Source: Obrimoposthia wandeli (taxonomy: Eukaryota). From it: a DNA stretch of 64,000 nt. Below, piece by piece: positions 31,280 through 55,600 of this stretch (the first letter of the stretch is position 1; each line of letters starts with the position of its first letter). A program made the position numbers and the translations under genes. The stretch covers positions 186,001 to 250,000 of the forward strand of contig CDROCS010001609.1 in assembly GCA_977020255.1 (NCBI GenBank), given 5' to 3'. The notes beneath the pieces are model-generated. The model saw only the letters and a program-made list of their open reading frames with translations, had not been told where the DNA came from and searched no databases.

Positions 31280-31924
31280 TCTACATGAGTGGTGTGTTGG
31301 TTAAAATACGTTTCTTTCCTTAGTCTTATATGATTTTATTCCTAATGTTCAATTTATCCTAATGTTCAATTTATCGAATTTTGCCTTATTAATTGGACAC
31401 TTTTCTCACATTCTTAGTATATAATAAAATATCTTTTTAGGTTTTTTATCAATATAATAATGACAATTTCAGATATACATCATACATAAAAATGGTGAAG
31501 GTCATTTACAGTTTTACAAGATTATTCAATAATAATATACAATTTTATGATAGATATTTTATCGCGGTATGCGAAACACGGGTTTAGTTCATGATGTCAC
31601 GTTTTTGTCAAAAAGTTACCTTCGGTTATTGTTGCCTTCTGGGCTGATTTGTCCGTTACTCCTCCACACAAAAATACAACAGCAGTTGCAGATGTCTTTC
31701 CAGCAGTGTACGATGGGTACTACTATCTGGAGGTAATCTCGGTTGTAAATGCGATATACCGAGAAGGATGAGTAGTCGATGGGAGTGTTGCTGTTGACAA
31801 TGAGGATCCAGGTCTCGGGGTATTGAATATGAAATTCGTGTCTGCAGTTGTTGGGTTTGATGTAACAGTCCTGGAATTCCTCGTAGGTGGTGTTGAATTT
31901 GGACTCGATCGAGGGTTGATTGTT

Positions 31925-33810
31925 ACGGGGCGATACTTGGGAGCGGCGTGCAACCTTTGTAACCTTGGCCGTGGACTCCCTAAAAAACCACGCATTCCCA
32001 TCGTGTTTCATAACCTCAAAGGATATGATTTGCATCATATACTTAAATACGCGTTGGGTACATTAAGCTCTTGGGAAATTTCATGTATACCTCAAACTTC
32101 AGAGAAATATTTATCTTTAACTGCATATACTGAATTCTGCAGTTTAAGATTCATAGATTTTCTGCAGTTTTTGAGCGGGTCTTTAAAAAATTTAACGGCA
32201 TCTTTAAATGCATGGCCAATTACACAGTCAGTGTTCCAAGCTTCGGTTAACGATAAGAGGATTTTTCCGCATAAATTTGCGAAAACTTTCGCAGATTTAG
32301 AAAATACAACTGAAATCCCACCCATAACTGAATTTGAGGGTGTAAGTCTTCAAGACTATAATGAGGCCCGTACATTTTGGGTGAATAATTGTCGAAATCT
32401 TTTAGAATATATGCTTTATTATATGAAGTTAGACATTTATCTTTTAGCTGATGTTTTTGAGTCCTTTCGTGTAAAGTCTTTAGCAGAAGATGGGCTAGAT
32501 CCATTGCATTTCTTTAGTTTACCTGGTCATTCATGGGCAACAGCAATAAAAACTCTTAAAATTAATATCGAGTTACTGCAAGATCCCGCGATGTATCAAA
32601 TGTATGATTATGGTATACGCGGTGGAATGAATTTTGTCAACAAACATCATGTTGTCAAAAATCAATCCACGGAGATTCTGTACATCGACATTAATAATTT
32701 GTATGGGTGGGCGCTTACTCAAACTCTACTTCATGCCTACTTTAAGGGTTTATGATGAGGAAGAGTTGAATAAGTTGATGTCAGATTTGGCTACTGTTGA
32801 TACAGTTTCATCAGATATTAGCTATTTGGTTGAGGTTGACTTAACAATCCCTCCAAATGTGCATGATAAATTAGATGATCTTCCAGTAGCGCCTGTTCAT
32901 CAATTCTCACCTAATTCAAAGGTTAAGAAATTATTGTTAACACATGAAGACAAGTTGAATTATGTGGTGCATTGGCGGCTTCTTCAATTCTACTTAAAGT
33001 TGGGAGCGAAAGTTACTCGAATTCATCGTGCTATAAGCTTCAGTCAAAACTTTGTGTTTATGACTATATTGAGAAGAATTCAAGAAAACGTAATTTGGCC
33101 ACTAGCAAATTCGATCGAGATTTTTACAAGTTAAAAAGTAATAGTCTCTTTGGAAAAACTGTGGAGGACTTGCGGAAACGTATTTGTCTACGGTTTTGCA
33201 ATGATGAGCGTAAACTAATAACATATACTAGCAAGTACAAATTCAAGCGTAGTTTTACAATTGCAGATAACTTGGTAGCAGTGTTATTAGGAAAACAGAG
33301 TATTTGTCTCGATCGACCGAGTTATATAGGTCAAACAGTTTTAGACATTTTTCATCTCAGAATGTACGAGCTCCAATATATAGAATTAGAGAAATATCGC
33401 ATGAATTCAATTGTGAGATCAAAATCGCAGCTGGGGACACTGACTCTTTCTTTTTAGAATGTAAAAATGTTAGTTTAGATAATCAATTATTACCGGCAAT
33501 GTTTAGGGACAACTTACTAGATACCCATAAATATCCCGCTAACCATCCTCTACACTCTATGAGTTTAAAGGATATTATCGGGAAATTTAAGGATGAAAGC
33601 GAGGGACAGGTTTCGTATGATGATTGTATTTTCCTACGCCCTAAATGCTACAGTTTACATGCATCTAATAATACATGTTCAATGAGAGCAAAGGGTGTGG
33701 GAAGAAACAATCTTACACATGAGGCCTACCAGGAAGTTTATGATACTGTGTATATTGAAAGCGTTGAGCAAACTAAATTTATTTCAAGAACCCATCAATA
33801 TTTACATTCA
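31925..33810 (+). pseudogene. Protein-primed family B DNA polymerase of Polinton/Maverick type; frameshifted, 5'-truncated
   Basis: HNLKGYD, FIDFLQFL, DIYLLADVFESFR, GIRGG, YIDINNLY, KLKSNSLFGK, GDTDS, GKFKDE, RPKCYS and AKGV spread across four overlapping ORFs. Confidence 0.93.
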
Positions 33811-34480
33811 TTTACATTCAATCTAACTGTAATTTATTCAACGAAAACTCTATTTTAATTTACTTATAGTCTAAATTACACTTGCATTCAATCAAACTAT
33901 CGACACTCTTATTTTTAAATTACATTCACTTGCTAAGACACATACTTGTATTGAAATTCATACTATCAATCACTTGCATTCATACTCGCATTCAATCTAA
34001 CTATAATTTATTCAACGAAAACTCTATTTTAATTTACTTATAGTCTAAATTACACTTGCATTCAATCAAACTATCGACACTCTTATTTTAAAATTACATT
34101 CACTTGCTAAGACACTTACTTGTATTGAAATTCATACTATCAATCACTTGCATTCATACTTGCATTCAATCTAACTATAATTTATTCAACAAAAACTCTA
34201 TTTTAATTTACTTATAGTCTAAATTACACTTGCATTCAATCAAACTATCGACACTCTTATTTTTAAATTACATTCACTTGCTAAGACACATACTTGTATT
34301 GAAATTCATACTATCAATCACTTGCATTCATACTTGCATTCAATCTAACTATAATTTATTCAACAAAAACTCTATTTTAATTTACTTATAGTCTAAATTA
34401 CACTTGCATTCAATCAAACTATCGACACTCTTATTTTAAAATTACATTCACTTGCTAAGACTCTTACTTGTAAATGACAT
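33810..34480. repeat. 174-bp tandem repeat, about 4 copies
   Basis: atctaact recurs at 33821, 33995, 34169 and 34343. Confidence 0.92.
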
Positions 34481-34980
34481 TCATACTTGCATGCATAATT
34501 TTATTCATTTACATTCATTCTACCTCTCATTTATTCAAACTCTCATTCAAATATTCAAATAAATTAATATTTTTACTAATTTTCTATTAATTCCGTTGTA
34601 ACTTAGTCGTTGAAACGAAAAGAATGTATAAAGAATGGACTTTCTTACTTTGTAAATGTTATTCACTTAAGTTTGAAGATGATATTATGAAATTACATAA
34701 TAAATGTGTTTAATTTTGTATTATTCTCTGACTTCTTTCTTATTATTTTTTTTTTTTTGATTTAATACAAATTTTAACATAATTCTTTAGATGTGTAAGC
34801 CTAGGAAAAACTTTAGTCTAAATTTTCGCATAGAATAGTATGTGTGTGATTACGTAATACATTCTTAACTAATAAGAGTGAACTTAGTATAAATTTCACA
34901 TAAAATAGTGTGTGTATGATTACGTCATACATTCTTAATTGATAAGAGTGAACTTTATCCTAAATTTTCATTATAGACTA

Positions 34981-35535
34981 GATCACAAAAAAGAAGGGTG
35001 GAGACTAAGCCACTTGATCCTTTGAATTAGTAGTTAGCCAAAAAGAAGGGTGGAGACTAGACCACAAAAAGAAGGGTGGAGACTAAGCCACTTGACTCTT
35101 TGAATTAGCAGTTAACCAAAAAGAAGGGTGGAGACTAGACCACAAAAAGAAGGGTGGAGACTAAGCCACTTGACCCTTTCATAGTGGTATATCACAAAAA
35201 AGAAGGGTGGAGACTAAGCCAGCCACTTGACCCTTTCATAGTGGTATATCTCAAAAAGAAGGGTGGAGACTAAGCCACTTGACCCTTTAAACTATGGACG
35301 ACCATAGTGGTATATCAAAGAAGGATGGAGTCTAAGCCACTTGACCCCCCTATCCTTCCCCTCCCCTCCCCTCTCGCCTCCCCCTAAAGGGTGTCATACC
35401 ATAAGGGTATATGTTGCCTCACCAGAGGTGAGGCAACATATACCCTTATGGTGTGGCAAGACACCTTTATGGTGTGACATCCTTATGGTGTGACACCCTT
35501 TAGGGGGGGGTCAAGTGGCTTAGACTCCATCCTTC
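34981..35535. repeat. Iteron-like direct repeats plus nested palindrome
   Basis: Eight aagaagggtggagacta(agccacttga) copies; 31-bp perfect IR at 35320-35350 / 35505-35535; 25-bp perfect stem at 35398-35422 / 35428-35452. Confidence 0.9.
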
Positions 35536-35538
35536 TAC

Positions 35539-36125
35539 CTACTTATATGCATGTATTATTTTAGGTAAAACTTGGACCCATTTTTTATTTCCTTCTTTTG
35601 TGAAATACCTTTTTATTCGATCTCTTAAAGTACGATTAAATCTTTCTACTACTGCTGCTTTGTATTGTGAAAACACAGAGTAGTGATTTATATTATTTTG
35701 TTTAAATAATGATTGAACTTGCTTATTATAAAATTCTTTTCCTAAATCAGTTTTCACATTTTGTGGAATGTCCTCTTTTAATATTTCTTTAATGGCTTCA
35801 AGCATATTGAAGACTTTGCATTAACTGGAATTGCACGAGCAAACCTGCTAAATACATCAATACACGTTAAAATATATCGATATCCCTTATTAATGGAAGA
35901 ATATGTGATCATCTCCATCAAATCCATTTGCCATAAATTATTAGGACCGCTGGTTTTGTAAACTCTAGTTGGAAACCTTCTTCTCATCGGTTTGTTCAGA
36001 CTGCAAGCTAACTGGTCGCTCAGCCATTTCTGCGTTTTCTTGTAATTGTGTTTTGTTCTTTTTGCTTATTTTAAAACTCCGGTGTAGCCAATTGGATCTT
36101 TTGGATTGAACCATATCTTCTTCAT
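35539..36125 (-). pseudogene. Polinton-type retroviral-like (rve) integrase, C-terminally truncated
   Basis: MKKIWFNPKDPIGYTGV..KWLSDQLACSLNKPMRRRFPTR, LWQMDL, YILTCIDVFSRFA, KTDLGKEFYN, KAAVVERFNRTL; one stop and one frameshift. Confidence 0.92.
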
Positions 36126-36211
36126 TACAACAATTTGAATAGAAAGAAAATTTAAATTTAGGTAAAGAAGGGTTAGCCCCCATATCTTTAGCTGATTTTA
36201 TAAATAATTGC

Positions 36212-36541
36212 TTATGAACGTGTCACAGCTATAATACTACTGATAATTGAAGCAACAACTGGAATAACAGCCCCTATGAAACTACCATTCTGTTTAAGAA
36301 TAATATTTCGTTTCCTTTTTTTACTTTTTACATTAGGAATATCTAGAAGAGTTTTTCTATATTTCTTTAATATATTTTTCCGTTTTCCAACTTTTACTCG
36401 ACCCAAAACAATATTATACAAAACTTCCAATAAATCATCTACAACAAAAGATGGAAATGCTTTAAGAATAATCATTCTCTTATGAGAAGAGGCTTTGACT
36501 AAAGCTTTAAAATAGGGTATGCTTCTTTGTATTTTCTTCAT
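36212..36541 (-). CDS. Small basic Polinton protein with KQNGSF plus hydrophobic tail (core/pX-like)
   Basis: 109-aa intact Lys-rich ORF ending KQNGSFIGAVIPVVASII; lies between integrase and ATPase. Confidence 0.6.
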   Translation of the reverse strand: MKKIQRSIPYFKALVKASSHKRMIILKAFPSFVVDDLLEVLYNIVLGRVKVGKRKNILKKYRKTLLDIPNVKSKKRKRNIILKQNGSFIGAVIPVVASIISSIIAVTRS

Positions 36542-36556
36542 TTTAATAAAAAAGGT

Positions 36557-37390
36557 TCAATTTAAATATTGTTTATATTCGAAGCCATTAAAGTTTTTTT
36601 TATTTCTCACTACAGATTTAATTAATTTATTCACTTCTTTTTTCTTAATGATTCTTTTTATTGATTTCTTAGATTTTACTTTACGTTTTCGTTTCACTAT
36701 CAACTTCTTAAAAAGCTAAAAAATTTATCTTTTATAATTGTTCTCTATTTGTTTATAAACAGTTACTCCCTTAGAATTAAATATGTCTGTTAAAACACGT
36801 AAATCATCTGGGCAAGCTTGTGTAAAGTCAATAAATATATACCCATGTGCTTGTTTAGCGGCATCATGGAATGAATCAACTAGAAAGTGCTTATTTTGAG
36901 GAAACGCCTTCTGGCCACGAAATCTACAACTGTTTGATCTCTAGGATTTTTAAATAAAACTAAGTAATGTACATTAAGATTTCTTGTTCTATGGTGACCT
37001 CCTTGGTGAAAAAGATTTTGAGTGATAAATATAACTGTTACTTCACAATGTCTTGCAATCTTTGTAAATAAATTATTAAAGTCCGATTCCTTGTTAGCTT
37101 CCTGATACAAATCATCAATTATTATTACATCTTCTTTTTTCAATCTTTCACACCAATTTGCATCAAATCCTTTAATAAATTTTATTACCTTCAACTTGCA
37201 AACTTCTGTTTGGGTTAATCCACTTTCCTCTCCTCCACCATGATGCCAATAAATATTTTTGAAACTAGAATTGAAAAGAGATTCATTTTGCAACAATTTA
37301 CATTCGAAATGTGTCTTTCCACTTCCACTGGGACCAACTATTTGAAATACAGCATTATTATTTAGCTCCCTTGCATATACTCTTTCATTT
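36557..37390 (-). pseudogene. A32/FtsK-like DNA packaging ATPase of Polinton
   Basis: Walker A GPSGSGKT, Walker B IIIDD, ITQNLF, LNVHYLVLFKNPRD, HGYIFIDF; frameshift near 36900 and no in-frame start. Confidence 0.9.
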
Positions 37391-38209: not shown

Positions 38210-38789
38210 TAGACTAAAATTGTATTCTGTAAAATCTTCTTTATATATGTCTGAACCTGCTTTTTTATTGCATGTTTCTTGTAATTATCTTCCAAACCCA
38301 TTATAATTTGGATGATATATTTCTTCCAATCAAATTTGATTTTTAATATGGATTTAGTCCAATCAAATTCGATGCTTTAGTTATATTAACCAATGAGATT
38401 CATGTCTTTGTTAGAAATTAGTATAAAAGAATGCGCCATTGAAGGACAAATCACAGTAAATGCATTCATATCAAAGACAATTATCAACGATGTACGATAG
38501 TCAACGGATATTAAGCGGTGACGAAGAATTAGAAATGTAATCCGTTTTATATGCACTGGTGGAGAGACTACATGCTCATCAAGATCATGTCTGCAGATGT
38601 CTTTAACCAACGTCCTCTACAAGGGCTCACAAGCCAAACAATTGAAGGATACTTCGCATCCACAGCCAACGCGCTACCGCAAGCCGGGAAAAACCAGATA
38701 CTCGCCATTACAGAAACTGCCATCATCCAACTGAAGAAGACGATGCAGCCATTTTTTACAATGACTCCAGTGGATGGTAAGAAATAAGA

Positions 38790-40209
38790 AGACAGAAACA
38801 ACAATTGATGCAGAAGAATCAGCCAAGCCTTATTGATGCCTATCAAAAGAATATGCCAACCTCAACTTTTCAGATGCCGCAAGATTTCTCAGATGTAGAT
38901 TTAGACGGAAGAATGGCTATTATGGCAAAAAAGGATATGCCCCCTTTGCCGCTGTTAAAGCTTCAAGACAGAGGAAACGTAAAGTTATAAATCCTCAAGA
39001 GAGTGTTCCTATTGACGCCTGTATACAAGCTCTCACCAAAACTGGCATTGTAGAAAAATCCACGAAAGGCCCGTTCTGGTCACAAGTGAGGATGGTACCG
39101 AAGACTAACTCACAACTGCGGAGGCTAATGGTGGACTTCAAACATCTGACACCACACTTGCCGAAGCTCTACATGAAAATCCCAAATATTTTCCATAAAC
39201 TCGAGAAGATACTAGAAGACAGAAGAGCTATTTGGATAGATTTACGTGGAGCTTTTTTCTAAGTAAAAATTAGACAGGCGTCAAGACATCTCACAAACAT
39301 TTGGCATAAAGATAGCTTTTATAGATTCACAAGACTTCCAATGGGCTTGAGGCAAAGTCCTGTCATATTGCAGTGGATCATCACCAGAATACTGAGACAA
39401 CTGGTGACGAAATGGACGGTGGATGTGGCCCACGTTCATATTGACGACATCCTAATAATCGCTAAAAAGAAAGCCAAAGTTTGGAATCAAATCGAAGATT
39501 TCTTCAAAGGTTGGGGCCTTCAAATCAACTATGAAAAATCACAATTGCAGCCAACAAACAAGTTGGAATATTGCGGAATGTTAATCGACATCAAGGCCCA
39601 GTAGATCAGATTACCTAATGACAAATGGAGGTCAACAGATGACATCAAAGAAAAAGAGCAGTTCACAGATGATGCAATCGATTTTCTCAACTACGTAAGT
39701 TGTGTGCTACACTGGCCCTATGTGACAAATTATGTACACACGACATTGAGAAAAAGATGCTACCAATTATTGAAGATCTATGCATCATTATGGAGTTGGA
39801 GGAAGGAGAAGCATCAACTTTGGGCCTCAGACGCCACAAATAACACAATTGCAGTCACGCAAATCAGGCCAAAGATCAAGACACATATGACAGCAAAAAT
39901 CGAATACCAGAATATATACCTACAAGAGGCTACGGCCTCATGACCATGTGGAAGGCAAAAAGACACGACATGATCTTATGCGACAATATGGCCCTGATAT
40001 GGTGTATCAGAAATAGAAGGATCCCCAAACAAATCAAACATTGGCGGATATTGATAGCGATACAAATGATGGCCTCCATCAAACGCCTACAAGTGCAGTT
40101 CATCCGGACGGAAGACAATCTAGCGGACGCACCCACAAGAGCACAAGAGATACCACAAGAAGACAGGGGAATCCTGCTGTCATACGAGATGCACCAGCCC
40201 ATCTCATAA
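38790..40209 (+). pseudogene. RT-RNase H pseudogene with hepadnavirus/nackednavirus-like (or DIRS-related) motifs
   Basis: One frame: RLMVDFK, WIDLRGAFF*, RLPMGLRQSP, HIDD, GLQINYEKSQLQP, SDAT; after a frameshift near 39930, CDNMAL and NLADAPTR. Confidence 0.85.
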
Positions 40210-40369
40210 CTAATGACAAAGGTGACATGTTATTTTATTTGTGTTCTCGCATTCGACTTCTACGTCGTACTTTTTATGTCTCACCCACTTGGGTAAAAGT
40301 TTTATCACTGTTAGGTGTTCTTTGCAGATCAGTCACATCTCTCTCTTAGCCAATCATCTACGGATTCCA

Positions 40370-41982
40370 TCTAAAAGATTTAATTAAGAAAAACAGAAGA
40401 ATAACAGTTATGAAAGCCAGCCGCTAGGAGAAATAGCAGTTGCTGTTCACTCCCAGACTCAGAGTGCATTAGCAACGTGCGAACAATCCAGCTGCCGGGA
40501 CGAGTAAAGTTAACAACCACTTAAATTAAGAGATAGTTAATTTAAGATTTTTCCCTTGCAGGAGCCGGAATTCACAGACATATACTTCGCAGTCATATAA
40601 ATTAGAAATTTCAGGGAAATTAAACAAAAAAGAAAAAAACGTAAAAAAGAATCCGAATAACTATCCGAACTGTGAAATAAAAAGAATCCTAACGACTATC
40701 CGAACTAAACAAAAACTACAGAAATCAGAGAGATTAACCAGTAAATTGATATATATAAGAAATGAAAAGGGTAATTCTTCGAACTCGCAATAGAACTGAA
40801 TGTCCAAAATCACGAGACAAGCCAACAGAAACAGAGCAAGGAATCAAACGAACGCCGAGTCGAACCATGCGAGACAGGACCCAGGAATCTGAGAGATTAA
40901 TTCCGAGTATCAGAGCCAATGAACAAGGCCTAGCAATTGATCGGCATTAGGGAGTGAATTAGGACGGACCTCGGAAAACAATCCTAGACTTACTGGTGGG
41001 GAGAGAGTAACATTCGAAATTTATTGCTTCAGTAATTTTGTCATTGGAAATAATCAATTCTGCTATATATCATTTCAGTAATTTGTCATTGAAAATAATC
41101 AATTCTGCTGTATATCAATTCAGTAATTTGTCATTGAGATTAATCAATTTTGCCGTAGTCTTTTGATATAAAATAGTTAATTAAATGGTTAATAGTCGGG
41201 TTCAGATCGTTAATCGACGCTTAAACAAATCAGTAAAAAACTAATTAATTTTATGTTAAATGTGTTTCTTTGTATTTTTTATTATTGTTGTATCGACTGG
41301 CAATTAGCAGCTAAACTGCATAATTGAAGTTTTAATTGAAATTAAAAATAAAGAATCAATACATGTTTATCCTCTTCTCAATTCTCAAATCAACCACAAA
41401 TCAACTTAACACGTAGATAATTTCAGTAATTTTGTCATTGAAAATAATCAATTTTGCCGTATTTTGTTGAAATAATCAATTCATATTGTTCGAAGTACTT
41501 TCACTAGTGACGTAACCTATTTGTAAGCAACATATTATTGAAAAGTATCAAATTTGTATTGTTGCAAGATATCGATTCATATTACTCAGAAGTGTCCGAT
41601 TCGTAATAGTGAGAAACTATCTACGCGTGTAATCAAATTTAGCAAATTAAATTGTAACTAGGAAGCGTACCCCAAATCTTTAACTTACTAGGAATAGTAG
41701 AATATATTCTAATCTATGGTCATCGTTATTTGTGGTTTGTTTGAACTAAGTGTTGTTTGATCAAATTGTTAAAACCTCTTTAGTTGGTGTAATAATATAG
41801 CTCTTTCCTACAGTTGACTATATTAATTCAGGTACCCATATATAGCTATAGAGCACTATCAACCACGTTCACATCACACTAAACTAAAAATATAGGCCCC
41901 ATACACCTGTAAGCCCTATTGCTACAGAACTCACGTTGGGTGCCTCCATACGAAGATCTAATCTCAAATAGAAACCCCAACA
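40370..41982 (+). mobile_element. LTR-like element (copy 2), opposite orientation, left end truncated
   Basis: Ends aatagaaaccccaaca; contains taagccctattgctacagaactcacgttggg; ~46-bp internal repeats at 41029-41160 and 41421. Confidence 0.7.
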
Positions 41983-42230
41983 AAGGTACTCCAGGATGAG
42001 AGTTGTTGGGCGTCACCCAGTCTCATGTGGCTGGGATAACGAGAAGTTATCCCGAAAGGGGTGAGGCCACGATTCCGTCTGGACCGCCACCTTTCTGTCA
42101 CCTGCAGTCGCATGTTCCTGTGGCGTTGGGGACACGCGGGGCATTGACGGTGCTCTCCTCCGTTGCAGCTGCCTGGGGAGTGATGTCCCACTGTCTGTCC
42201 ACGGACGACCAGCTTCATTAGGATATGTAA
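41983..42230 (-). pseudogene. Diverged partial paralog of the RING-gene C-terminal region
   Basis: GQTVGHHSPGSCNGGEHRQCPACP...VTERWRSRRNR aligns with GRLVGRHSATSCIGGE*CQCSTCP...VMEVWRSSRDR. Confidence 0.65.
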
Positions 42231-43151
42231 TAAAAAGGGAAAGAACACATTAACAAATAATAGTGCATCAAAATATCCCACCGGTCGAATCAGTGAAATC
42301 GTAGTGAAACTGATTAAAATCTATACCTATTTAAATCGTATTGTAATATTGGTGTAACAGGTACCCTAATATCTGTACTCTATTTCAGATATGTTTTTTA
42401 AAATAAATTGTAGTATAAAATGTTCTGCATGAATAATTAAAACATGTTTATATAATTTGTATTATCAACAAAATGTGTGATGATTGCTAGACCATAACCT
42501 TGAGTAATTATCTGAAAGAAGGATAAGAGGGTTAATTTGATATCATTTCCTATGTTTGGGTTTAAAACTGTGTTTGTGATATTAATAGATCGGTATACTG
42601 TTTCGCGACATTGTTAAAGTGATACAACATTTTATTTTCACTGCTTTAAACGACTGTGTAAGAAATTTTCATTAAGATTTTTTTTACTTGGATATATTTT
42701 AGAAGAATTTGAGTTAATTCAGGTTTAGAAAATTTATATTAATTAATATGAAAAATAAAAATATAATAAAATAAAAGGTATATAATAAGTATAAGATGTC
42801 TAATATTTCTTGATGATTTTTTGCTATATACAAATTTAAAACCAATATTATAAGCAAATATAAGTATATAAATGTATGATTCAGATCTTCTATTATGCAA
42901 CAAAATTAGTGTGTATAGCACATATATTGTATGTTTTTAGCATAGAAATAAATTGACAATTAACTTCTAAAATATTTTTCAATTAATTATGTAAAATACA
43001 AGCTATCACGTTTTATTGATCACTAATATCAATAGATTGAATTTATTTTATAAAATAAACAACTTTAGTAGATTACAATTTGTTTAATTTAGGTGTTTTT
43101 TTAAATAATTTATTGTCAATTTCTAATTTTACGTGACGGATTGCAGCAAAA

Positions 43152-46100
43152 ATGCCTGAGGTTATTTATTTAATTAATCAATGAAATTACATTTACCATT
43201 TTAAAGCCAATAACTGTATTGCTAACCGGAGCGGCTGGTCAGATTGGGTATGCTTTGGTATCAGCTGTTGCTAACGGTTCTATCTTTGGTCCGAATCAGG
43301 TTTCGTTTTTGTATTTTATTGCGAGATTTAATTCTTTTTTAAATAGCATGTGATCTTGCATTTGTTGGACATTCCCCAAATGCTTCAATCACTCAATGGT
43401 CTCATAATGGAGCTGGAAGATTGTGCTTTTCCTTTGTTGAAAAGTGCATTTTATATAATTGATTTTCAGTAATTAATATTTTTCAGAGGTCATTGCAACA
43501 TCGGATCTGAAAGAAGCGTTTACTGATGTTGATTACGCTCTGATGGTGGGTGCAATGCCCCGAAAAGAGGGCATGGAGCGCAAGGACTTGCTGAAGGCCA
43601 ATGTCAGCATCTTTAAGGTACAAGGAGAGGCGCTTGACAAGCATGCCAAGAAGACGGTTCGTGTACTTGTGGTCGGGAATCCTGCAAATACAAACTGCTA
43701 CATCATGAGCCACTATGCACCATCAATTCCCAAAGAGAACTTCTCTGCTCTTACAAGACTCGATCACAACAGAGCTCAGGCGCAGGTGTGTATTAAGTAT
43801 AACGCTGTAAACATTGTAAGTGGAAAACTTTACTAATAATTTGAGTTCATTTATTATTAGAGTAAATATTCTGTAACATTTTTGATATTCACTCAAAATG
43901 ATTAATCTGTTTCACAGATTAGAATCCTATAAATTTACTAATTGTAATAAAATCAGTGAAAACTTCATTCAATTCAATCAAAAGTCATAAAACCTTTGCT
44001 ATGAAGTGCATATTTGTTACCATATGCGTATTTTATGTTGAAATATTTTCAGGATTTAATTAATAATGTATAATTTAGATCATACGGATGTAATTTAACA
44101 TTATGGATTAGGTATATTATTGAGTAAAAATATTCTAAAATTTTCATTTGAATGAGTCCTGCTAATTTATATATCTTTTCAAACAAACTTATCTGTAATC
44201 TTTGGTTTATAAGTTTGAATGTGTGTTTTAGCATTACCTGAAAATGATATTTTTCAAAAATAGAGCTGATAATTAATAATGAATATAGAAAAATAATGTT
44301 TACATGCTAACTGAAACTATTTTTTAGAATAAATACACCGGGTAAATTTTTTATTAAATGAAAGAGTAATTAAACAGTCTATAAAGAAGATGAAAATCGT
44401 ATGTTTTTTATGTGAATTTAATGTAAAAGAATTTATTAGACTGGTAAAGTGAGTTTATAAAGAACATATTCAATGTAAAATAACAATTCTTGGCCAAAGA
44501 ATTGTGTTTGTAAATATTTCAAAATTTCGGTGTTGAATTTTTGGTATTGAATAATGAAAATATTCACCTTTCCATTGCAATAATGTTATTTGGTGATTAA
44601 ACTAACATACTCTCTAACCTTTGTAAATATTTTGGATTTAGGTAACTTAAGCTAGGATTAATCAATAACTACTTCTTTAATTGTAATTAATCCATCTAAT
44701 TTTAGCGAATGCAGTTATTTGGTGATAGAAGCTCGTATAAAACTTCGAACTACGGTTTAATGTCATGAAAATAAACGTATTTTCTAATTGAATAGTATAT
44801 CGATCATAAATCTGAGTTTATTCATTGTTTAAAGTCAAAAATCACCTGTGTTATGTATTTATAAGATATCTACAGTAACATGCAAACAAATATTTCTGCT
44901 TCATATGTTTCAAAAATTAAATATGTAATTTTCGTGTAGTCATTTTCTTTTTCCCTTTCAGAAGGCCTAATTTTATAAATCACGATTTTGGCGTGAAAGA
45001 AGAACAGTGAAGGCTTGTCCAGTGGACAATGTCCGCTGTATTTTCAGTATTAACTTGATTTTGTACTATTAATTTATATAAATTATTTAAATACTGTAAG
45101 GACTGTTTTGCAATGTACAAATAAATTAATAAAAAATGTGTTTAATTTCCATTTCTTTTTTGGTTTCCTAAAAAGTACCGAAAATAACTTAATTTTTTGA
45201 GTACCGATTAATTATTAAATCGAACTCTAAATGAAAATATAAATCTTAAAAAGAAAGTTGACTAACGCAGATTAGTTTGAATAAGAGTTGGAAATGTACA
45301 AAATGTCGCTTGTTTAGATTGGATTTCTATCGTAATTTGTCTTATAACTATCCTTCACCATGTTGCAGATTGCTAACCGAGTTGGAGTGGCCTGCAATAG
45401 CGTGTCACGCTGCATCATCTGGGGCAACCACAGCAGCACGCAGTACCCGGACGTGAGCCACGGTATCGTACATGGTCTGGACGGCAAGCAACACAGCGTG
45501 AAGGATGCCGTCAAGGACGACTGCTGGCTCAAAAGCGAGTTCGTAAAGACAGTGCAGACTCGTGGGGGAGCTGTCATTGCCGCCCGAAAACTCAGCAGTG
45601 CTTTATCGGCTGCCAAGGCTATTGCGGACCACTGCAGAGACTGGTTCCATGGCTCGGTAAGTGATATCTCAATGTTCTAGAATCATTCGTCATTTGACTA
45701 TTTACAAAATGATTATTGATTATTTATTAAAATTTATTCAATAACATAATTTCTTAAAGGGCCATCAATTTAGTAAGTAAGCACTGAGACTGAGAGAAGA
45801 AATGCATACATAGTGATGAAGGATATGTGCTGGAAAGCATATGAAAGCGGTATACTCTGAAAAATGATATTATATAATAAAAATATGTCGCTAAAATATA
45901 CAGTTGCTTTGTCATGTCAGTTTTTTTCAATATTGTGGGCCAATCATGTCATTGAGAATAGCCGAGGAATTGTGAATTATAGCTAGGTGTAGCGAGCCTG
46001 CATTCTTCACTTTTTAATGATTCAATGCCTGTCTAACAAAGGCTTTGTTCTTACATTCTCAGCCAATTTTGTGATGGATATATTATGTTTAAGCATCGCA

Positions 46101-49100
46101 TTATATGTTCATTTTTCCCACTGTGTATGTTCAATTGTATTCACGTCAGATATGATTACATTTACTGATTTGTAGATTTGGTAGTAACTCAATCTTATAG
46201 ATTTTTAAGATCGAAAGGTTTTCATAGAATAAATATGCGATCAAATTGCATTCGAAAAGTTTATGATTATGTATTAGTATGAAGATCATGATAGCGGTAC
46301 CCCGTAAAATGAATAATTGTGTACATAGGGTGGATCCCTTCAAGATGGTCAAAATTATGCAATATTATGCGTACGTACTAAATGGATAACATCGATAAAA
46401 TCCAAAATATTCTTTACAATTTTATAATGTGCAGTTTTCTATACATTTTAGTGAACAATTGTACAAATAAACAATGTTTCAATAGATTACAATAGAAGAG
46501 TTGTCTGATTAAATTATTCATTCTTTTATTATTCTTATGACATTTAACAATATCTATTGGTGTTGGCTGGATAGTAATATTTCTGCTTAACACACCAGTT
46601 TGACCAAGTACAGACGAAGAATCGCGTCTGGAACAAACTGCAATGTGCGTACGTGACAAAGTACATATGAATTGTTTATTATATGCTGGGGTAAACAGAC
46701 GCCATTTGTGACCTATAATTTTAATTGGCACTGTCGTAATAATTACCACAGTTACCGGAAACAGATCTAAACTTGAGTTTACAGGTTACTACATCAACCA
46801 ATATTTGTTATGAGAAAATTCGTTTGAAATTATAAAATGAATTAAATTTTATAACAAACACAAAATTTTAAACATTAGTAGAAAATTAGTATTTAATTTT
46901 ATCACAAATTTTGCTTTTAAATGTCTGTTACATAAAGATTTAACAATATTATAAATATTTATTTTTCTTGGTTAGCATTGAGAAAATATCGAAATATAAT
47001 AAGAAAACTGAGATGCCTATTACATGACATTATTAGATAAATACTTTACTTACAAAATTCTTTACTTTAATATTCCAGTTAATCAATTAATCGCTTAACA
47101 AAGCTGTCAGAATTATATTCAAATTACAAAAATGTGTTAGTACAATTGAACATTTAATGGAGCTCCATTGCTTACTGATCATTGCCAGAATTTAATTTAA
47201 GATCCCTTTTATTACAAAAATTATATTTTGTCACAAAATCCTAAATATTTATATGGTTGTCTCGAGCCTGGTACAGTAAATATTTATATGCATCTTAGGG
47301 GCAACGATGACAGAAGATGGGTTAATAAATTCTTAAATAACACAGATTAATGGAATATTTGAAATTTAAGCTCCGATTTTTTCTCAAACTGTAACAATCT
47401 AGAAAAATTTAAGAAGCAACTAACGATTTTACTATGGGTGCGAAATTTGGACTAGTCAAATCGGTTAATTTTATCATCAAATAAAAAAAAATAGCAACAG
47501 AAAAAAAAAGTTGCACACAGAAAAATAAACTAGCATCAATTAAATAAATTTGCAAGAAATTAAATAGCTTTTACTACTAATTAAATTTATATTTGCAACA
47601 ATAAAAAATCATACTATATGCTTTTTTTTTCAATAGTCAAATCGATCAAATTTATCATCAAATAATATTTTTTTTTCATCAAATTTTTTTTCAAATTATA
47701 CATAATTAGATAAATTAAAAATATTCGATATTATTGGAATTTATAAGAAATAAAGGAAAACTAAGTATTTCCAGCAATAATAATGTGGTCATTTTCAATA
47801 ATTTAAATGAAGATGTTAAGACAATTCAAACTTTTGATAAAGCGATTGAAACAAACTTTTCAATAAGTACTGTCTCAGTTAATAATGATATATGGAAATC
47901 ATCAAAGTGTACTTGTGCTTCGTTTTTCAAGAACTACATATGTAAACATATAGTCATTTCTGCACTATTATTGAAACTAACAACTGATGATGAAAGGGCT
48001 AAATCCATATTTTAGGGTCAAAAGAAAAAACGCGGTCGTCCTAAGAAAGCAACTCGTGCGTTAATAATTTCTTAATATACATTTTGAATTATGTTATACG
48101 TTATATTCATTTAATTTTAAAATATTACCTTTTATAATCCCATATAATCCCATTTTAAGTTGAGAAACATAATATTTTAGAAACTAAATTTAAAATAAAA
48201 TTCTTAAAGTTCTTATGTTTTACGTTATATTCTTCTAAGAAACTAAATTTGATGCTAAAATTATTTTTTAGATGGTGAAAAATAATTAAATATTTGACTG
48301 TATTTTTTATTGTTTTGATGATAAAAAATTATTTCGCGTTTTACTATTTACAAATATTACGAAGAAAGCTCTTTTGACTAATAAAATATTATTTTATTAG
48401 ATATTATCGCTTTATTAAATATATTATTGTGATGGTTATTATTTTTATTCTAACTAAACAATGGCACAATATTATGTCATTCTCTTGATAATTTATGGAA
48501 TAATATGTAATTATTAGATCATTTAATTTTATATCAATGTGACAGTAATCAGTGCAATATTTTTTTAATTAACAGCTTTGGTGTTAAACTACTAATAGGA
48601 TGGAAAATTCTCATCTTGAGCAATATTGTACTTCTAAAATGTGCTTGTAAATAGTGCATAGATCATTTATGAAAAATCTTACGCGAATATTGTAAAAGTT
48701 GCTTATTTACGGCTCATCTAAAATTTTCCTTTTCAAAAACTTAATAATTTATATATAAGTGATTTATTTTCTCAGTAATGGAATTATATTAACAAAATAA
48801 TAACGTTTTCCCTTTATCGAAAGAGAATAATTTTAGTTTAAATGGGTTAGGTTATTACGAAAATGTTATAAAATTAATCAGATTTTGAAATATCAACATT
48901 TTCAGAAACGCAGTATTTTATATATATATCGGCAGTTAGTTGTATTTGAGGCAAGTGAAAGTAGAATTACGCCAAAAATTAGGGCCTCATAGTTGTATTT
49001 GATTTTATTATAATGATATTTTTTTGTTGCTCTACGTAAAAGTATTAAATAATTTTTTTAAAAGGTTTGCATAGTTTCTATAAAATTTATATCTAAATAG

Positions 49101-49692
49101 GCTCTTATAGGCCCTGTATATATATATATGAAAATTATATTTAGTTATAACAATAAAATATTAGGTACGATCTATTGCGAAAAAAGTAAATACTTGTTTT
49201 GATTTTTTTTATAAATTCTATTGTTGCAAAATAGATCCAAATATTTCAGGTTGCTGTTTAGAAAGATTCAAATCTCCTGACTTATTAATAAAAGTTTTCT
49301 AAACATCAGCATTGTGTAATCTGTATCCGTATTATCTTTTTTAATTTAAATAATTTAATTTGTTATTGATATAAAATATTTTTTGTAATCAAGATATTAA
49401 AAAAGCATTAAAACATATTTCCCTTTGAGAGAAAATTTTAAAGTTGTACTATTTTATTTTACAATGAATATATTCTGGTGTGCAGAAAGAATGGGTATCA
49501 ATGGCTGTCTACAGCGATGGAAGCTACGGAGTACCTGCCGACATATTTTACAGTTTCCCGGTCACGATATCTGGAGGCAAATGGCACATTGTGCAGGGTC
49601 TGTCTGTAGATGACTTCTCTCGCCAGAAGATGGATGACACCGCCAAAGAACTCGTACAGGAAAAGACGGATGCGGTTTCCTTCTGCAGTTGA
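43152..49692 (+). CDS. MDH1: Cytosolic malate dehydrogenase, multi-exon
   Basis: [108 protein letters not shown]; GT-AG introns. Confidence 0.97.
47860..48075 (+). pseudogene. MULE-type transposase C-terminal remnant (SWIM finger plus AT-hook)
   Basis: [18 protein letters not shown] followed in frame, past a stop, by KKKRGRPKK. Confidence 0.65.
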
Positions 49693-52649: not shown

Positions 52650-53900
52650 TAAATATAGCCAATTATTTAATTATTTACATTTTATTCGTAAAGATTTTGC
52701 TAGTCCATGTTGCGTTGTATTACAGTTGGTTATGTATGTACACGGGGTGTGCATGATGGTTGTAGAAATTCTTCGCTCGAAATCACATACTGTGATTTGG
52801 ACTGGGTGCACTTTGTTTTCTTTATCGTACAAATTATGATTGCTATCAATTTGTGCTTGAGAAATTCAGGTGTATCGAACAATTCACATCTTCCATTTGA
52901 CATTTGACAGAAGACTTAGGAATGTACTCTTAGTAATTATCTTTAACGTTTCTAAACTCGTCGTCATTTCGAAGATGTCTGCTTATGCGTTCCACGCTAC
53001 TCCCAAGGTCTTTATGCTTTGCATGGTTTCGCCATCCGCGATTTGTAATACTTTCGCTTGGTCTGCTGTGGCGATTTGTTGGTTGACTCTGTCATTGTTG
53101 CTTAACCATTTTTGGCACTCATTCCCACGCTGTCCCACACCCGCAGCATATCTTGTTGTAACTGTATTGCCTCTTCGACGGACGGCACATAATTCAAACT
53201 ATCATCTATGTATGTGGATTGTAGTATCGTCTCGATGGCTATGTCAAATAATCCCACGAACTTCTCCGTGTTTATTCGAGTCACTAACTGTGCTAAAAAG
53301 TTTATTCCAAACACTACCCGATTAAATTCATACATTTTCACTTTTCTGCGCTCTTTCCGTAGAAACCTCAACCACGCTTTATCCTTCTCTGCCACCTTTA
53401 TCTGGAGATACATCTCTGATATATCACAAACTAATGCTACAGCACCTTTTCTGAACCTTAACAAGATCGTTACTAGATCTACTTGCAGCTTCGGCACACA
53501 ATGAATTAAATCATTCATACTTATGCCTCGCACTTCCACCGCTGCATTGAACACTATTCGAACTTTAGTTGTTTCATTTTCCAGCTTGATGGTCGGAAAA
53601 AGCGATAACAACCACTTAGTCAACTTTACTTCATCTTCCGGTACCTTTCTGATGTAACCCTTCTCGTAAGCTCTCGATGACTGCCGTGTACTCCGATTTC
53701 AACTGTGTGTCTTTGTCCAATCGTCTCTCCAAGCTCCTCTGCCACTGGTTAGCCATTTCACAGTTTTATCTAACATTAGTGTTCTTATTTTTCACGGAAA
53801 ACTTACTTCAAAACTCTCTTCCACCTCTACTATTTCGCGTCGTGTTTCCTGCAATACTTTATCATCGTTATGATTTAACTTTCCTTGGATAGTTGGTACG
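52650..53900 (-). pseudogene. BEL/Pao LTR retrotransposon pol remnant
   Basis: TTKVRIVFNAA, LLRFR, CDISEMYLQI, LRFL, YEFNRVVFG, TYIDD are typical Pao-type RT motifs. Confidence 0.85.
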
Positions 53901-53999
53901 GCTTCTACTTCCCAGAATTTTACTATATCGAAAATCTCTGTTTCGATATGCGTTCTCAAATATGCATGGGTTAAATTTTGTATATTGTCGACCTCTCGT

Positions 54000-55600
54000 T
54001 GATCATCGTACCCGACCTATACAAGTCCATGTCTATCGACTGTTGTCTATCCATGTACTTATTATTCGTTCTCCATTGCGGCGGAGTATACCTACTACCT
54101 CTATTCCATGGTAGGGGTGAATTATATCATCTGTAATTATTTCCAAAATTATTATTACCGAATCTACTATTTCCGAATTCCTTACTTCTAGTACAATCTC
54201 TCGAGTAGAAACCCATTTTTTACCTGTATAACACATTATTCTTCCTCGAATGTATATTTTATTATGTCCGTCTTCGAACTGTACTGGACGACTATTCTGT
54301 CTATTATCATAGCGTCCTCTAAAATAATTTCTTCGGAAATTTGTTTCATAACCGTTTCCTCGATTATTGAATCTTCCATCACTATCTCCTGCATTATTTC
54401 TGAATCGAGAGTCTTTTCGCTCTCCTCTGTTTGCGTTATAATTCCGATCGTCTCCTCTTCAGGGTAGGCGATTTCTTGAATTGTCTCTACTAAATTTATT
54501 TCTGGAATCATCTCTGTTTCTGTTCCACGAATCATTACTATTTCTACTTCTCGAATCGTCTCGATTCCTATTCCATGCATCGTTATTGTTTCTACCTCTC
54601 GAATCATCTCTATTTTTACTTCTGAAATTATCTCTATTTCCGTTACCAGATTCATCTTTTTTTTGAACTTATTTTGTTCATAATTTCGATTCTGAAAATT
54701 ACTTGATTCTGCCTTATTCACGAATACTTTGTCTTATCCTCATCACCAGCGGCCACTGCGTTGATCGCAAATGCTGCCTTATTCTTTATATTTTTCTCAA
54801 TTTCTCTCGCCTTTCGTACGGCATTATCAAGATCATTTGTATCCGATACTGCCAATAATATTTTAATCTTTTTTCAATCCTCCTCTGAATATATCCATCA
54901 AAACGTCTGCCATTTCATTTTTGTTCCGATTATCTTCCGCTAATTGTACATCTTCAGCCACAGGTTCACCTGCCTGATTTCTCAATATCTTTCTTGGATG
55001 CGCTCGTGCTGCCAAGGTTCTCAAAACATACGCATATTCATTCAAGCTCTCGTCATGTTTCTGTTTATGTTCTCTCCAAATTCGCTTATTCACTTTTTCT
55101 AAATCTTCCAATACCAATTTTCCTATAAAAGCATTTTCTAGTGTTTCCCAATCTACATGTTTTGCTTCTGTCATGTGTTTATACACTTCGAGTGCTAGTT
55201 CAGTCAAATGCGTCTGTACGCGGACAAATATTTCTTTATCGTTCCATCCTTGAACGTCTGCGCAACTGGAATATTCCGCGAGGAAGACACAAATACTTTC
55301 CTCATCTTCTTTAAACTTTGTAATCTACAATTCTCCCGAAATGTTAGGTCTCAACGTCGCATTCAAAGCTTATGTCAACTGATTCGTATTCATATTACCT
55401 ATATTATGTACGGCATTATTTCCTGGTTGAGCTCCTGCGTGAGCCATATTTTCAACTTATTCCTTCAATATTATTCTAATCAATTTTCGCAATCTCTTCT
55501 GGATTGGCACTTTCAATATCATTTTTATTCACGACTTCAGTAACTTCAATTTCTTGGTTTACTTCACCTAACCAATCAGTCTATTCAAAACAGTCAGTTG
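54000..55600 (-). pseudogene. Gypsy-like gag remnant
   Basis: DWETLENAF...KQKHDESLNEYAYVLRTLA retrotransposon gag motif, downstream of the LTR at 56147. Confidence 0.65.

What the first reader, a model, noticed from the sequence alone, without database searches (positions are those of the whole stretch)
38790..40209. Hepadnavirus/nackednavirus-like reverse transcriptase-RNase H in an invertebrate-type genome
Seen: LPMGLRQSP (cf. hepadnaviral PMGxGLSP; LTR and DIRS usually PFG), RNase H SDAT (cf. hepadnaviral ADAT vs DIRS TDAS), CDN, and NLADAPTR (cf. NPADDPSR vs ADxLSR). No integrase, protease or tyrosine recombinase was found nearby. Established: HEART retroelements and nackednaviruses are the known relatives of hepadnaviral P. 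Inference: a possibly new HEART-like or endogenous proto-hepadnaviral lineage. A truncated DIRS/Ngaro element remains possible, since INYEKSQLQP is shared with DIRS.
Basis: partly seen in the sequence, partly recalled or inferred. Interest (0 to 1): 0.78.

Follow-up and report, generated by a model that had tools for sequence, protein, structure and literature searches.

The report
Dead hepadnavirus-like RT gene in animal DNA
A broken, chromosomally integrated copy of a reverse transcriptase-RNase H gene whose nearest relatives are hepatitis-B-virus-like polymerases, not DIRS transposons; it adds one more fossil to a recently recognised invertebrate branch of that virus group.

Summary
The + strand at about 38.84-40.21 kb holds a full-length but broken RT-RNase H reading: two in-frame stops and at least one frameshift.

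The hepadnavirus-like interpretation holds on three tests.
- **Nearest relatives:** among 1.84 billion representatives, several of the closest proteins pass Pfam's threshold for the hepadnaviral polymerase C-terminal (RNase H) domain, PF00336. None carries an integrase, a methyltransferase or a Gypsy-type RNase H.
- **Profile scores:** each of four stop-free pieces, scored apart, fits that group's profile far better than the DIRS-like or Gypsy profiles.
- **Tree:** an NJ tree separates the window and the PF00336 proteins from 85 DIRS-like and Gypsy RTs in 92% of bootstraps.

The closest relative shares only 36-44% identity. The window shares a His-for-Tyr change in RT motif C (HxDD) with 31 of 32 members of its clade.

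I found no terminal protein, core gene, tyrosine recombinase or terminal repeats. The element sits in a roughly 2.6-kb GC-richer island between Maverick/Polinton debris and a cytosolic malate dehydrogenase gene. HEART retroelement or one-off viral integration remains open. Reference viruses and relatives' contigs were not fetched, because that step is barred.

Verdict: a new member of a known kind, of moderate interest.

The parts
38410..41020 (+). Compositional island, the likely extent of the integrated element (about 2.6 kb; edges approximate)
   Evidence: GC rises from 0.25-0.30 to 0.40-0.47 and the + strand turns A-rich (AT skew +0.15 to +0.42) between about 38.4 and 41.0 kb. A TATAAAAG string lies at the left edge. 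AT-rich 45-bp tandem repeats start just beyond the right edge.
38843..40209 (+). P-like gene remnant (reverse transcriptase + RNase H). Broken: two in-frame stops and at least one frameshift, with no large insertion or deletion
   Evidence: The outer bounds come from protein matches and the ORF end. RVT_1 E=1.8e-13. Colinear match of four pieces to positions 97-509 of the hepadnavirus-like group profile.
38900..39772 (+). RT domain (fingers, palm, thumb). Motif C reads HIDD and the Asp residues of motifs A and C are present
   Evidence: tblastn with P0001: E=1.8e-51, one aligned stretch.
39790..40150 (+). RNase H domain (approximate bounds). The three alignable catalytic Asp columns are kept; the Glu column could not be scored cleanly
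   Evidence: A profile built from four PF00336-positive relatives hits the C-terminal piece at 32.6 bits, E=4.8e-10. Group profiles give 31-32 bits. Pfam itself gave no hit on the window's pieces.
38551..38787 (+). 78-codon ORF inside the island, upstream of the RT and in another frame. It is a candidate remnant of the N-terminal part of the P-like protein; its function is unknown
   Evidence: ORF listed. No Pfam family. No match to the N-termini of 17 relatives, best E=0.17.
40210..41020 (+). 3' part of the island with no recognisable coding signal. It is A-rich and holds a duplicated 35-nt unit at 40644-40706
   Evidence: Only short ORFs with no family. No protein relative extends past about 40140.

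Best explanation
This is a dead, chromosomally integrated copy of a hepadnavirus-like element. What survives is its polymerase gene, a reverse transcriptase fused to an RNase H. That gene belongs to the assemblage holding hepadnaviruses, nackednaviruses, proto-nackednaviruses and the invertebrate HEART retroelements. It does not belong to the DIRS/Ngaro or LTR retrotransposons. In a working relative, the RT copies an RNA intermediate into DNA and the RNase H removes the RNA template. In Blubervirales the RT primes on its own terminal-protein domain at an RNA stem-loop. Whether this lineage did the same is unknown. This copy can no longer make the enzyme, because the reading has two stops and at least one frameshift. 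It belongs to a deep clade whose RT motif C reads HxDD instead of YxDD. It lies in intergenic, transposon-rich DNA about 2.2 kb upstream of a cytosolic malate dehydrogenase gene. Shown: RT-RNase H identity, decay, integration, and kinship to PF00336-bearing proteins rather than DIRS-like or Gypsy ones. Inferred: kinship to the named viruses and to HEART, the replication mode, and the route of arrival. I lean about 55:45 to a HEART-like retroelement copy over a one-off viral integration.
For: RVT_1 E=1.8e-13. In the exhaustive search only 414 of 1.84e9 representatives reach E<=1e-3 and 6 reach 1e-10. The 150 best hits fall into four groups: a hepadnavirus-like group HEP6 (32 proteins plus the window), HEP2 (13), a DIRS-like group (70) and Gypsy (15). 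All 8 PF00336 matches among the first 115 hits lie in HEP6 (P0004, P0005, P0008, P0047) or HEP2 (P0011, P0022, P0051, P0107). P0148 also matches PF00336, at 51.6 bits. None of about 50 scanned HEP members has RT_RNaseH, rve, Dam or a recombinase. Piece-by-piece profile scores for HEP6 are 82.7/135.8/31.7/31.4 bits, against 26.1/104.8/-1.4/11.8 for the DIRS-like group and 30.8/89.4/-2.0/-0.2 for Gypsy. The result also holds without P0001. NJ bootstrap: window+P0001 93%; window plus the PF00336 members against DIRS-like plus Gypsy 92%. Integration is shown by host MDH exons at 43.2-49.7 kb and by transposon debris on both sides. Relatives in the same clade sit on contigs of 6 to 277 kb, larger than any 3.0-3.5 kb blubervirus genome (genome sizes from PMC12691608). 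One HEP2 member is an annotated protein of the damselfly Hetaerina americana on a 4.3-Mb contig. HEART elements are described as insect and invertebrate relatives of Blubervirales with an unresolved mobilisation mechanism and frequent changes at conserved RT residues (PMC12691608, PMC11551314, PMC12440569).
Against: Pfam PF00336 does not match the window's own RNase H pieces, even at E<=1, so the link runs through the relatives. I found no terminal-protein domain, core gene, epsilon-like RNA or direct repeats. A fold search with the model of the closest relative's RT was not specific: caulimovirid and retroviral RTs came first and hepadnaviral Protein P only from rank 36. I could not include reference hepadnaviral, nackednaviral, proto-nackednaviral or HEART sequences. 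The trees are distance-based, on 217 columns. The DIRS-like label of the comparator cluster rests on sub-threshold Dam and PCIF1 methyltransferase matches plus weak RT_RNaseH matches.
Confidence: 0.78

Rival explanations
1. A variant of the main reading: the island is a one-off endogenous viral element. It would be a germ-line integration of an episomal proto-nackednavirus-like DNA virus, not a copy of a transposing HEART-like retroelement.
For: At about 2.6 kb the island is close to, but below, the 3.0-3.5 kb genome size of these viruses (PMC12691608, PMC11551314). There is one copy in 64 kb. There are no terminal repeats or target duplications. Some relatives sit on contigs of viral genome size: P0022 on 3.4-3.6 kb and P0075 on 3.8 kb.
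Against: No core gene remnant was found. At least nine members of the window's own HxDD clade sit on contigs of 6-277 kb, so integrated copies are common in that clade. The virus-size contigs belong to the YxDD group HEP2, not to the window's clade.
Confidence: 0.33
2. A truncated DIRS/Ngaro/PAT tyrosine-recombinase retrotransposon that has lost its recombinase.
For: DIRS-like RTs are the most numerous class among the 150 best hits (70), and the RT core still scores 105 bits against their profile. The motif E region is equally common in both groups.
Against: The window is split from the DIRS-like cluster in 92% of bootstraps. Three of the four pieces score 20-57 bits lower against the DIRS-like profile. 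Diagnostic residues differ (M not F, S not A, H not Y, T not S). No methyltransferase, recombinase, inverted terminal repeats or split direct repeats were found in 34-46 kb.
Confidence: 0.05
3. A fragment of an LTR retrotransposon (Ty3/Gypsy or BEL/Pao), with the weak rve signal 2.9 kb upstream as its integrase.
For: rve pieces lie at 35.5-36.0 kb. LTR-element debris lies elsewhere in the window.
Against: The rve pieces are on the opposite strand, between a protein-primed polymerase B and an A32-like ATPase, which is the Maverick/Polinton gene set. The window's RNase H pieces score about 0 bits against the Gypsy profile. No LTRs were found. No protease or gag family was found in the island.
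Confidence: 0.03

Closest known systems
HEART retroelements (hepadnavirus-like retroelements of insects; Gong & Han 2018, as cited in PMC12691608, PMC11551314 and PMC12440569)
   Same: Integrated in an animal-type genome. The RT is related to Blubervirales rather than to DIRS or LTR elements. No integrase or recombinase is known, and the way of moving is unresolved. Conserved RT residues are often changed (PMC12440569), which fits the HxDD motif seen here.
   Different: I could not compare directly with HEART1/2, because the paper and its sequences are not held. The host is unidentified. The closest protein in 15 billion is only 36-44% identical, so the element may lie outside the two described HEART lineages.
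Proto-nackednaviruses (Pliego, Toolik and rotifer-associated PnNV-1 to -5; PMC11551314, PMC12691608)
   Same: A P-type RT-RNase H. Several of the window's relatives pass Pfam PF00336 and sit on contigs of about 3.4-3.8 kb. An invertebrate association is suspected.
   Different: Those viruses are episomal circular genomes with a core gene, a terminal-protein domain, DR1/DR2 and epsilon. None of these was detectable here. This copy is integrated and broken. The virus-size contigs belong to the YxDD sister group, not to the window's HxDD clade.
Endogenous hepadnaviral elements of vertebrates (eHBV; PMC7955980)
   Same: A decayed polymerase-gene fossil in a host chromosome without terminal repeats.
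   Different: eHBVs derive from true Hepadnaviridae and are recognisable by direct similarity. Here even Pfam's hepadnaviral RNase H model misses the window's own pieces.
DIRS1-like / Ngaro / PAT tyrosine-recombinase retrotransposons (PMC3266345, PMC6681497)
   Same: The same broad branch of eukaryotic RTs, the RT-RNase H order, and similar motif D and E regions.
   Different: No recombinase, methyltransferase or characteristic terminal repeats. The tree, the profile scores and the diagnostic columns all separate the window from the DIRS-like cluster.

Membership tests
Hepadnavirus-like P-type RT-RNase H (Blubervirales + HEART assemblage) | The RT groups with P-type polymerases rather than with DIRS or LTR-element RTs | tested here: met
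   NJ on 217 columns and 146 sequences: window plus four PF00336-positive proteins against 85 DIRS-like and Gypsy RTs in 92% of 200 bootstraps. The references are proxies labelled by Pfam, not named viruses.
Hepadnavirus-like P-type RT-RNase H (Blubervirales + HEART assemblage) | RNase H of the hepadnaviral type (Pfam PF00336 DNA_pol_viral_C), scored directly on the window | tested here: not met
   No Pfam family at E<=1 for either RNase H piece. The pieces are short and broken, so this is a weak test.
Hepadnavirus-like P-type RT-RNase H (Blubervirales + HEART assemblage) | RNase H homologous to that of PF00336-positive relatives | tested here: met
   A profile of four PF00336-positive RNase H domains hits the window's C-terminal piece at 32.6 bits. 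The HEP6 and HEP2 profiles give 31-32 bits, against 11.8 for the DIRS-like profile and -0.2 for Gypsy.
Blubervirales (hepadna-, nackedna-, proto-nackednaviruses) | Terminal-protein domain N-terminal to the RT | tested here: inconclusive
   The N-termini of 17 relatives find nothing in 36.0-38.9 or 40.15-42.5 kb, best E=0.17. Those N-termini are alike only within four pairs of relatives. PF00242 matched none of the relatives.
Blubervirales (hepadna-, nackedna-, proto-nackednaviruses) | Core (capsid) gene next to or overlapping P | tested here: not met
   No Pfam family in any ORF of 60 codons or more in 37.4-42.3 kb, and only short ORFs downstream. Divergent core proteins could escape Pfam.
Blubervirales (hepadna-, nackedna-, proto-nackednaviruses) | Epsilon stem-loop and DR1/DR2 repeats | tested here: inconclusive
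   No Rfam family reaches the gathering score anywhere in the window. Only chance-size direct repeats occur in the island. Rfam's models come from vertebrate viruses.
Blubervirales (hepadna-, nackedna-, proto-nackednaviruses) | Small episomal circular genome of about 3.0-3.5 kb | tested here: not met
   The sequence is embedded in a 64-kb chromosomal stretch with a host MDH gene and transposon debris. At most it is a fossil of such a genome.
HEART retroelements | Integrated in an invertebrate genome | tested here: inconclusive
   Integration in a eukaryotic chromosome is shown. An animal host is likely: the cytosolic MDH is closest to animal MDH1, and Maverick and LTR-element debris is present. 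The species and phylum were not identified.
HEART retroelements | The RT clusters with HEART1/HEART2 reference sequences | not tested
   The describing paper and its sequences are not held. The step is referred.
HEART retroelements | Multiple genomic copies | not testable with these tools
   There is one copy in the window. The rest of the host genome is not available here.
DIRS/Ngaro/PAT retrotransposons | The RT nests within DIRS-like RTs | tested here: not met
   The window joined a DIRS-like or Gypsy sequence to the exclusion of the PF00336 proteins in 4% of bootstraps.
DIRS/Ngaro/PAT retrotransposons | Tyrosine recombinase ORF. DIRS1-like elements also have a methyltransferase domain after the RNase H | tested here: not met
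   No such family in ORFs of 60 codons or more across 35.5-44.2 kb on either strand. Decay could hide one.
DIRS/Ngaro/PAT retrotransposons | Inverted terminal repeats or split direct repeats | tested here: not met
   No flanking repeat pair of 20 nt or more with convincing identity in 34-46 kb.
LTR retrotransposons (Ty3/Gypsy, BEL/Pao) | LTRs, a same-strand rve integrase, and an RT_RNaseH-type RNase H | tested here: not met
   No LTRs. The only rve signal is on the opposite strand within Maverick remains. The Gypsy profile gives about 0 bits on the RNase H pieces.

The most novel reading that the evidence does not exclude
The window's element, its lone close relative P0001 and the roughly 30 HxDD proteins form a previously undescribed, family-level lineage of hepadnavirus-like elements. 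This lineage would have replaced the near-universal Tyr of RT motif C by His and kept it across deep divergence (median 32% identity). It would exist largely as integrated copies in invertebrate genomes. Such a lineage would sit between the described HEART elements and the proto-nackednaviruses and would bear on how hepadnaviruses arose from retroelements.
Probability: 0.3. Interest if true: 0.72.

Novelty: new member of a known kind. Interest (0 to 1): 0.5.

Why it matters
The origin of hepatitis-B-type viruses is currently pictured as retroelement (HEART), then naked invertebrate virus (proto-nackednavirus), then fish nackednavirus, then enveloped hepadnavirus (PMC12691608). The retroelement end of that chain rests on very few sequences, described as enigmatic (PMC12440569). 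This locus is a chromosomal fossil from that poorly sampled end. The search it prompted shows dozens of mutually distant relatives in public assemblies, some on long cellular contigs, that share an unusual HxDD catalytic motif. If that clade is not simply HEART under another name, it widens the known diversity at the root of Blubervirales. It also gives a datable genomic marker, because the locus sits next to a conserved host gene. For this particular copy the practical meaning is small: it is broken and inert.

Tried and rejected
- **Word-index protein search with the RT core:** blank. This is expected, because that tool only sees proteins of 62-198 aa for this query.
- **PDB sequence searches:** run with the RT core and with a 28-member profile of relatives. 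They returned only caulimovirid, Ty3, foamy and retroviral RTs. No hepadnaviral polymerase chain came back, so the result does not discriminate.
- **Structure route:** the AlphaFold model of P0001 (pLDDT 70; RT part above 90, N-terminus below 50), searched against BFVD, put caulimovirid and retroviral RTs first and hepadnaviral Protein P from rank 36. This shows a generic RT fold and I did not use it as support.
- **Terminal-protein search:** nothing found with relatives' N-termini.
- **Flanking features:** Pfam on flanking ORFs, Rfam and terminal-repeat searches found nothing that belongs to the element. Two short edge matches of 13-15 nt are of chance size.
- **Host identification:** three exact look-ups of neutral window ORFs were not on record. 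A word search with a neighbouring transposon ORF gave only unnamed hits of 55% identity or less.
- **Closer kin of P0001:** none found.
- **HxDD as a decay mutation:** rejected, because 31 of 32 clade members share the His.
- **The rve signal as part of this element:** rejected on strand and neighbours.

Full report
**Observation**

The three + strand frames of 37.5-41.7 kb show an RT followed by an RNase H between about 38.84 and 40.21 kb. The reading is broken by two in-frame stops and at least one frameshift.

I queried it as four stop-free pieces, never joined across frames. The RT core piece matches Pfam RVT_1 (E=1.8e-13). The other pieces match no Pfam family. Only one copy exists in the window.

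**Extent and setting**

A fine composition profile shows an island of GC 0.40-0.47 with an A-rich + strand from about 38.41 to 41.02 kb. The surrounding DNA has GC 0.25-0.30.

- **Inside the island:** upstream of the RT lies a 78-codon ORF in another frame, with no recognisable family. Downstream of the RNase H lie about 800 bp without coding signal.
- **Ends:** no LTRs, inverted terminal repeats or convincing terminal direct repeats exist. A TATAAAAG string sits at the left edge. I attach no weight to it.
- **To the left:** remains of a Maverick/Polinton. These are a protein-primed polymerase B split over four overlapping ORFs at 31.8-33.9 kb (+), weak rve pieces at 35.5-36.0 kb (-) and a weak A32-like ATPase at 36.9-37.3 kb (-).
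- **To the right:** exons of a cytosolic malate dehydrogenase lie on the + strand at about 43.2-49.7 kb. They match Ldh_1_N and Ldh_1_C, and the best PDB matches are animal cytoplasmic MDH at E=4e-39. I searched these exons one by one by reference and left out the joined model.
- **Further right:** two LTR-retrotransposon remnants.

So the element is integrated in intergenic, transposon-rich chromosomal DNA of a eukaryote, most likely an animal. I could not name the species. The contig is not human-like: it has about 31% GC, and its MDH differs from the mammalian enzyme.

**Relatives**

The word-index search was blank because of its length rule. Pfam gave only the generic RT family, so I used the exhaustive search once, with the RT core. 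Only 414 of 1.84 billion representatives reach E<=1e-3, and 6 reach 1e-10.

The best hit, P0001, is a partial protein on a 2.1-kb contig filed under a Chloroflexota MAG, which is surely a mis-binned contig. It is 44% identical over the core. Over 291 residues of a single-frame reading with X at the two stops it is 36% identical (blastp E=7e-56; tblastn E=1.8e-51). P0001 itself has no closer kin.

**Classifying the 150 best hits**

An RT alignment (217 kept columns) clusters them into four groups:

| Group | Members | Pfam content of scanned members |
|---|---|---|
| HEP6 | 32, plus the window | RVT_1; PF00336 in P0004, P0005, P0008, P0047 |
| HEP2 | 13 | RVT_1; PF00336 in P0011, P0022, P0051, P0107 |
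| DIRS-like | 70 | RVT_1, weak RT_RNaseH, sub-threshold Dam or PCIF1-type methyltransferase after the RNase H |
| Ty3/Gypsy | 15 | RVT_1, RT_RNaseH, rve, Integrase_H2C2 |

Among the first 115 hits exactly 8 match PF00336 (DNA_pol_viral_C), the hepadnaviral polymerase C-terminal (RNase H) domain. I located all 8 in HEP6 or HEP2. P0148 matches it too, at 51.6 bits. None of about 50 HEP members scanned has RT_RNaseH, rve, Dam or a recombinase. None of 16 DIRS-like members scanned has PF00336.

**Three placement tests**

- **Profiles built per group, scored on each window piece apart.**

| Group profile | Piece 1 (bits) | Piece 2 (bits) | Piece 3 (bits) | Piece 4 (bits) |
|---|---|---|---|---|
| HEP6 | 82.7 | 135.8 | 31.7 | 31.4 |
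| HEP2 | 49.0 | 108.3 | 18.2 | 32.4 |
| DIRS-like | 26.1 | 104.8 | -1.4 | 11.8 |
| Gypsy | 30.8 | 89.4 | -2.0 | -0.2 |

  The matches are colinear over HEP6 profile positions 97-509, and the result holds without P0001. A separate profile of four PF00336-positive RNase H domains hits the window's C-terminal piece at 32.6 bits.
- **NJ with 200 bootstraps.** Window+P0001 are sisters in 93%. The split of the window and the four PF00336 members of HEP6 from all 85 DIRS-like and Gypsy sequences appears in 92%. The window joins a DIRS-like or Gypsy sequence without them in 4%.
- **Column shares.**

| Column | HEP groups | DIRS-like group |
|---|---|---|
| Residue after LP in RT motif B | Met 87% | Phe 80% |
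| Residue before the final Pro of that motif | Ser 84% | Ala 70% |
| Residue after DA in RNase H | Thr 56%, Ala 33% | Ser 100% |

**The HxDD motif**

The window's motif C reads HIDD. This is not decay. His occupies that column in 31 of 32 HEP6 members: 27 read HxDD and 4 have one Asp changed. Only P0001 has Tyr. All 13 HEP2 members, 62 of 69 DIRS-like members and all 8 scored Gypsy members read YxDD.

HEP6 members are only 23-56% identical to each other in the RT (median 32%), so the His has been kept across deep divergence. One His in the query cannot explain this. I found no paper in the held library that uses 'HxDD' for an RT. Kojima notes that HEART sequences often carry changes at conserved RT residues (PMC12440569), which may be the same thing.

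**Virus or retroelement?**

- HEP6 members sit on contigs from 1.8 kb up to 277 kb. Nine are on contigs of 6 kb or more. That is larger than any blubervirus genome of 3.0-3.5 kb (PMC12691608, PMC11551314), so integrated copies are common in this clade.
- HEP2 includes proteins on contigs of viral size (3.4-3.8 kb). It also includes an annotated protein of the damselfly Hetaerina americana on a 4.3-Mb contig.
- In the window I found no terminal-protein match. That test is uninformative, because relatives' N-termini are alike only in pairs.
- I also found no core gene, no epsilon-like Rfam hit and no terminal redundancy.

I therefore commit to a decayed integrated copy of a hepadnavirus-like element. 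I lean slightly to a HEART-like retroelement over a one-off viral integration.

**What did not help**

PDB holds no hepadnaviral polymerase that either query finds. The fold of P0001's RT is generic, with caulimovirid RTs first and hepadnaviral Protein P from rank 36.

- I did not fetch the DNA of the contigs that encode the relatives, by look-up, pattern or accession.
- I did not bring in reference sequences of hepadnaviruses, nackednaviruses, proto-nackednaviruses or HEART.

As a result, the tests 'full copies encode a recombinase or core gene' and 'tree with named references' remain open.

**Things a reader of the record should know**

- **Cluster look-ups.** I used the listing of cluster members on 30 hits to obtain names and contig sizes. 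This also returned seven extra member proteins (P0151-P0157), which I did not use.
- **Single-frame working file.** For the tree I used, inside scripts only, a single-frame reading of the window with X at its two stops. That working file is in /scratch.

**Verdict**

The locus is a new member of a known kind, a hepadnavirus-like or HEART-like endogenous element. It has an unexplained clade-wide HxDD motif that deserves a proper phylogeny.

Noticed in passing
window 38900-39772 (motif C) and proteins P0002-P0109 of group HEP6: His replaces the near-universal Tyr of RT motif C (HxDD) in the window and in 31 of 32 of its nearest relatives. Those relatives are only about 32% identical to each other. 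The sister group, the DIRS-like group and the Gypsy group keep Tyr. No paper in the held library uses the term for an RT.
   Followed up: partly
window about 43200-49690 (+): Exons of a cytosolic malate dehydrogenase gene (Ldh_1_N and Ldh_1_C; best PDB matches are animal cytoplasmic MDH). The RT island lies about 2.2 kb upstream of the first coding exon I could see. I searched the exons singly and did not join them.
   Followed up: partly
window 31823-37296: Decayed Maverick/Polinton remains. A protein-primed DNA polymerase B is split over four overlapping ORFs (+). Weak rve integrase pieces are split over two ORFs at 35539-35987 (-). A weak poxvirus-A32-like ATPase lies at 36880-37296 (-).
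   Followed up: partly
window 34000-35540: Tandem arrays: three 174-bp units at 34000-34521, then 78-bp and 26/52-bp units at 34988-35350 with a matching inverted copy at 35505-35536. They lie between the Maverick polymerase and integrase remains.
   Followed up: no
window 53102-55207 (-) and 61919-63427 (-): Two LTR-retrotransposon remnants. One has RVT_1 and Retrotrans_gag pieces at 53.1-55.2 kb. The other has Integrase_H2C2 and RVT_1 pieces at 61.9-63.4 kb.
   Followed up: partly
window 58269-60439 (+): Three consecutive open ORFs (103, 310 and 263 codons) with no Pfam family. The 310-codon ORF has unnamed relatives of 55% identity or less on megabase ENA contigs, some in clusters of up to 29 members. 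It is probably an uncharacterised transposon protein.
   Followed up: partly
window 41028-41171 and 41422-41476: AT-rich 45-bp tandem repeats start right at the 3' edge of the island, with a further copy 300 bp on.
   Followed up: no
window 41850-42300: A short GC-rich patch (GC 0.51-0.52) between the island and the MDH gene. It has open frames on both strands but no Pfam or Rfam match. It could be a CpG-rich promoter region or a 5' exon of the MDH gene.
   Followed up: no
protein P0093 (group HEP2): NCBI XP_071447403.1, an 'uncharacterized protein' of the damselfly Hetaerina americana on a 4.3-Mb contig, belongs to the YxDD sister group. It is an annotated insect genomic relative of hepadnavirus-like polymerases.
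   Followed up: no
protein P0001: The window's closest relative is filed in GenBank as a partial protein of a Chloroflexota MAG, on a 2.1-kb contig. That is almost certainly a mis-binned eukaryotic or viral contig.
   Followed up: no
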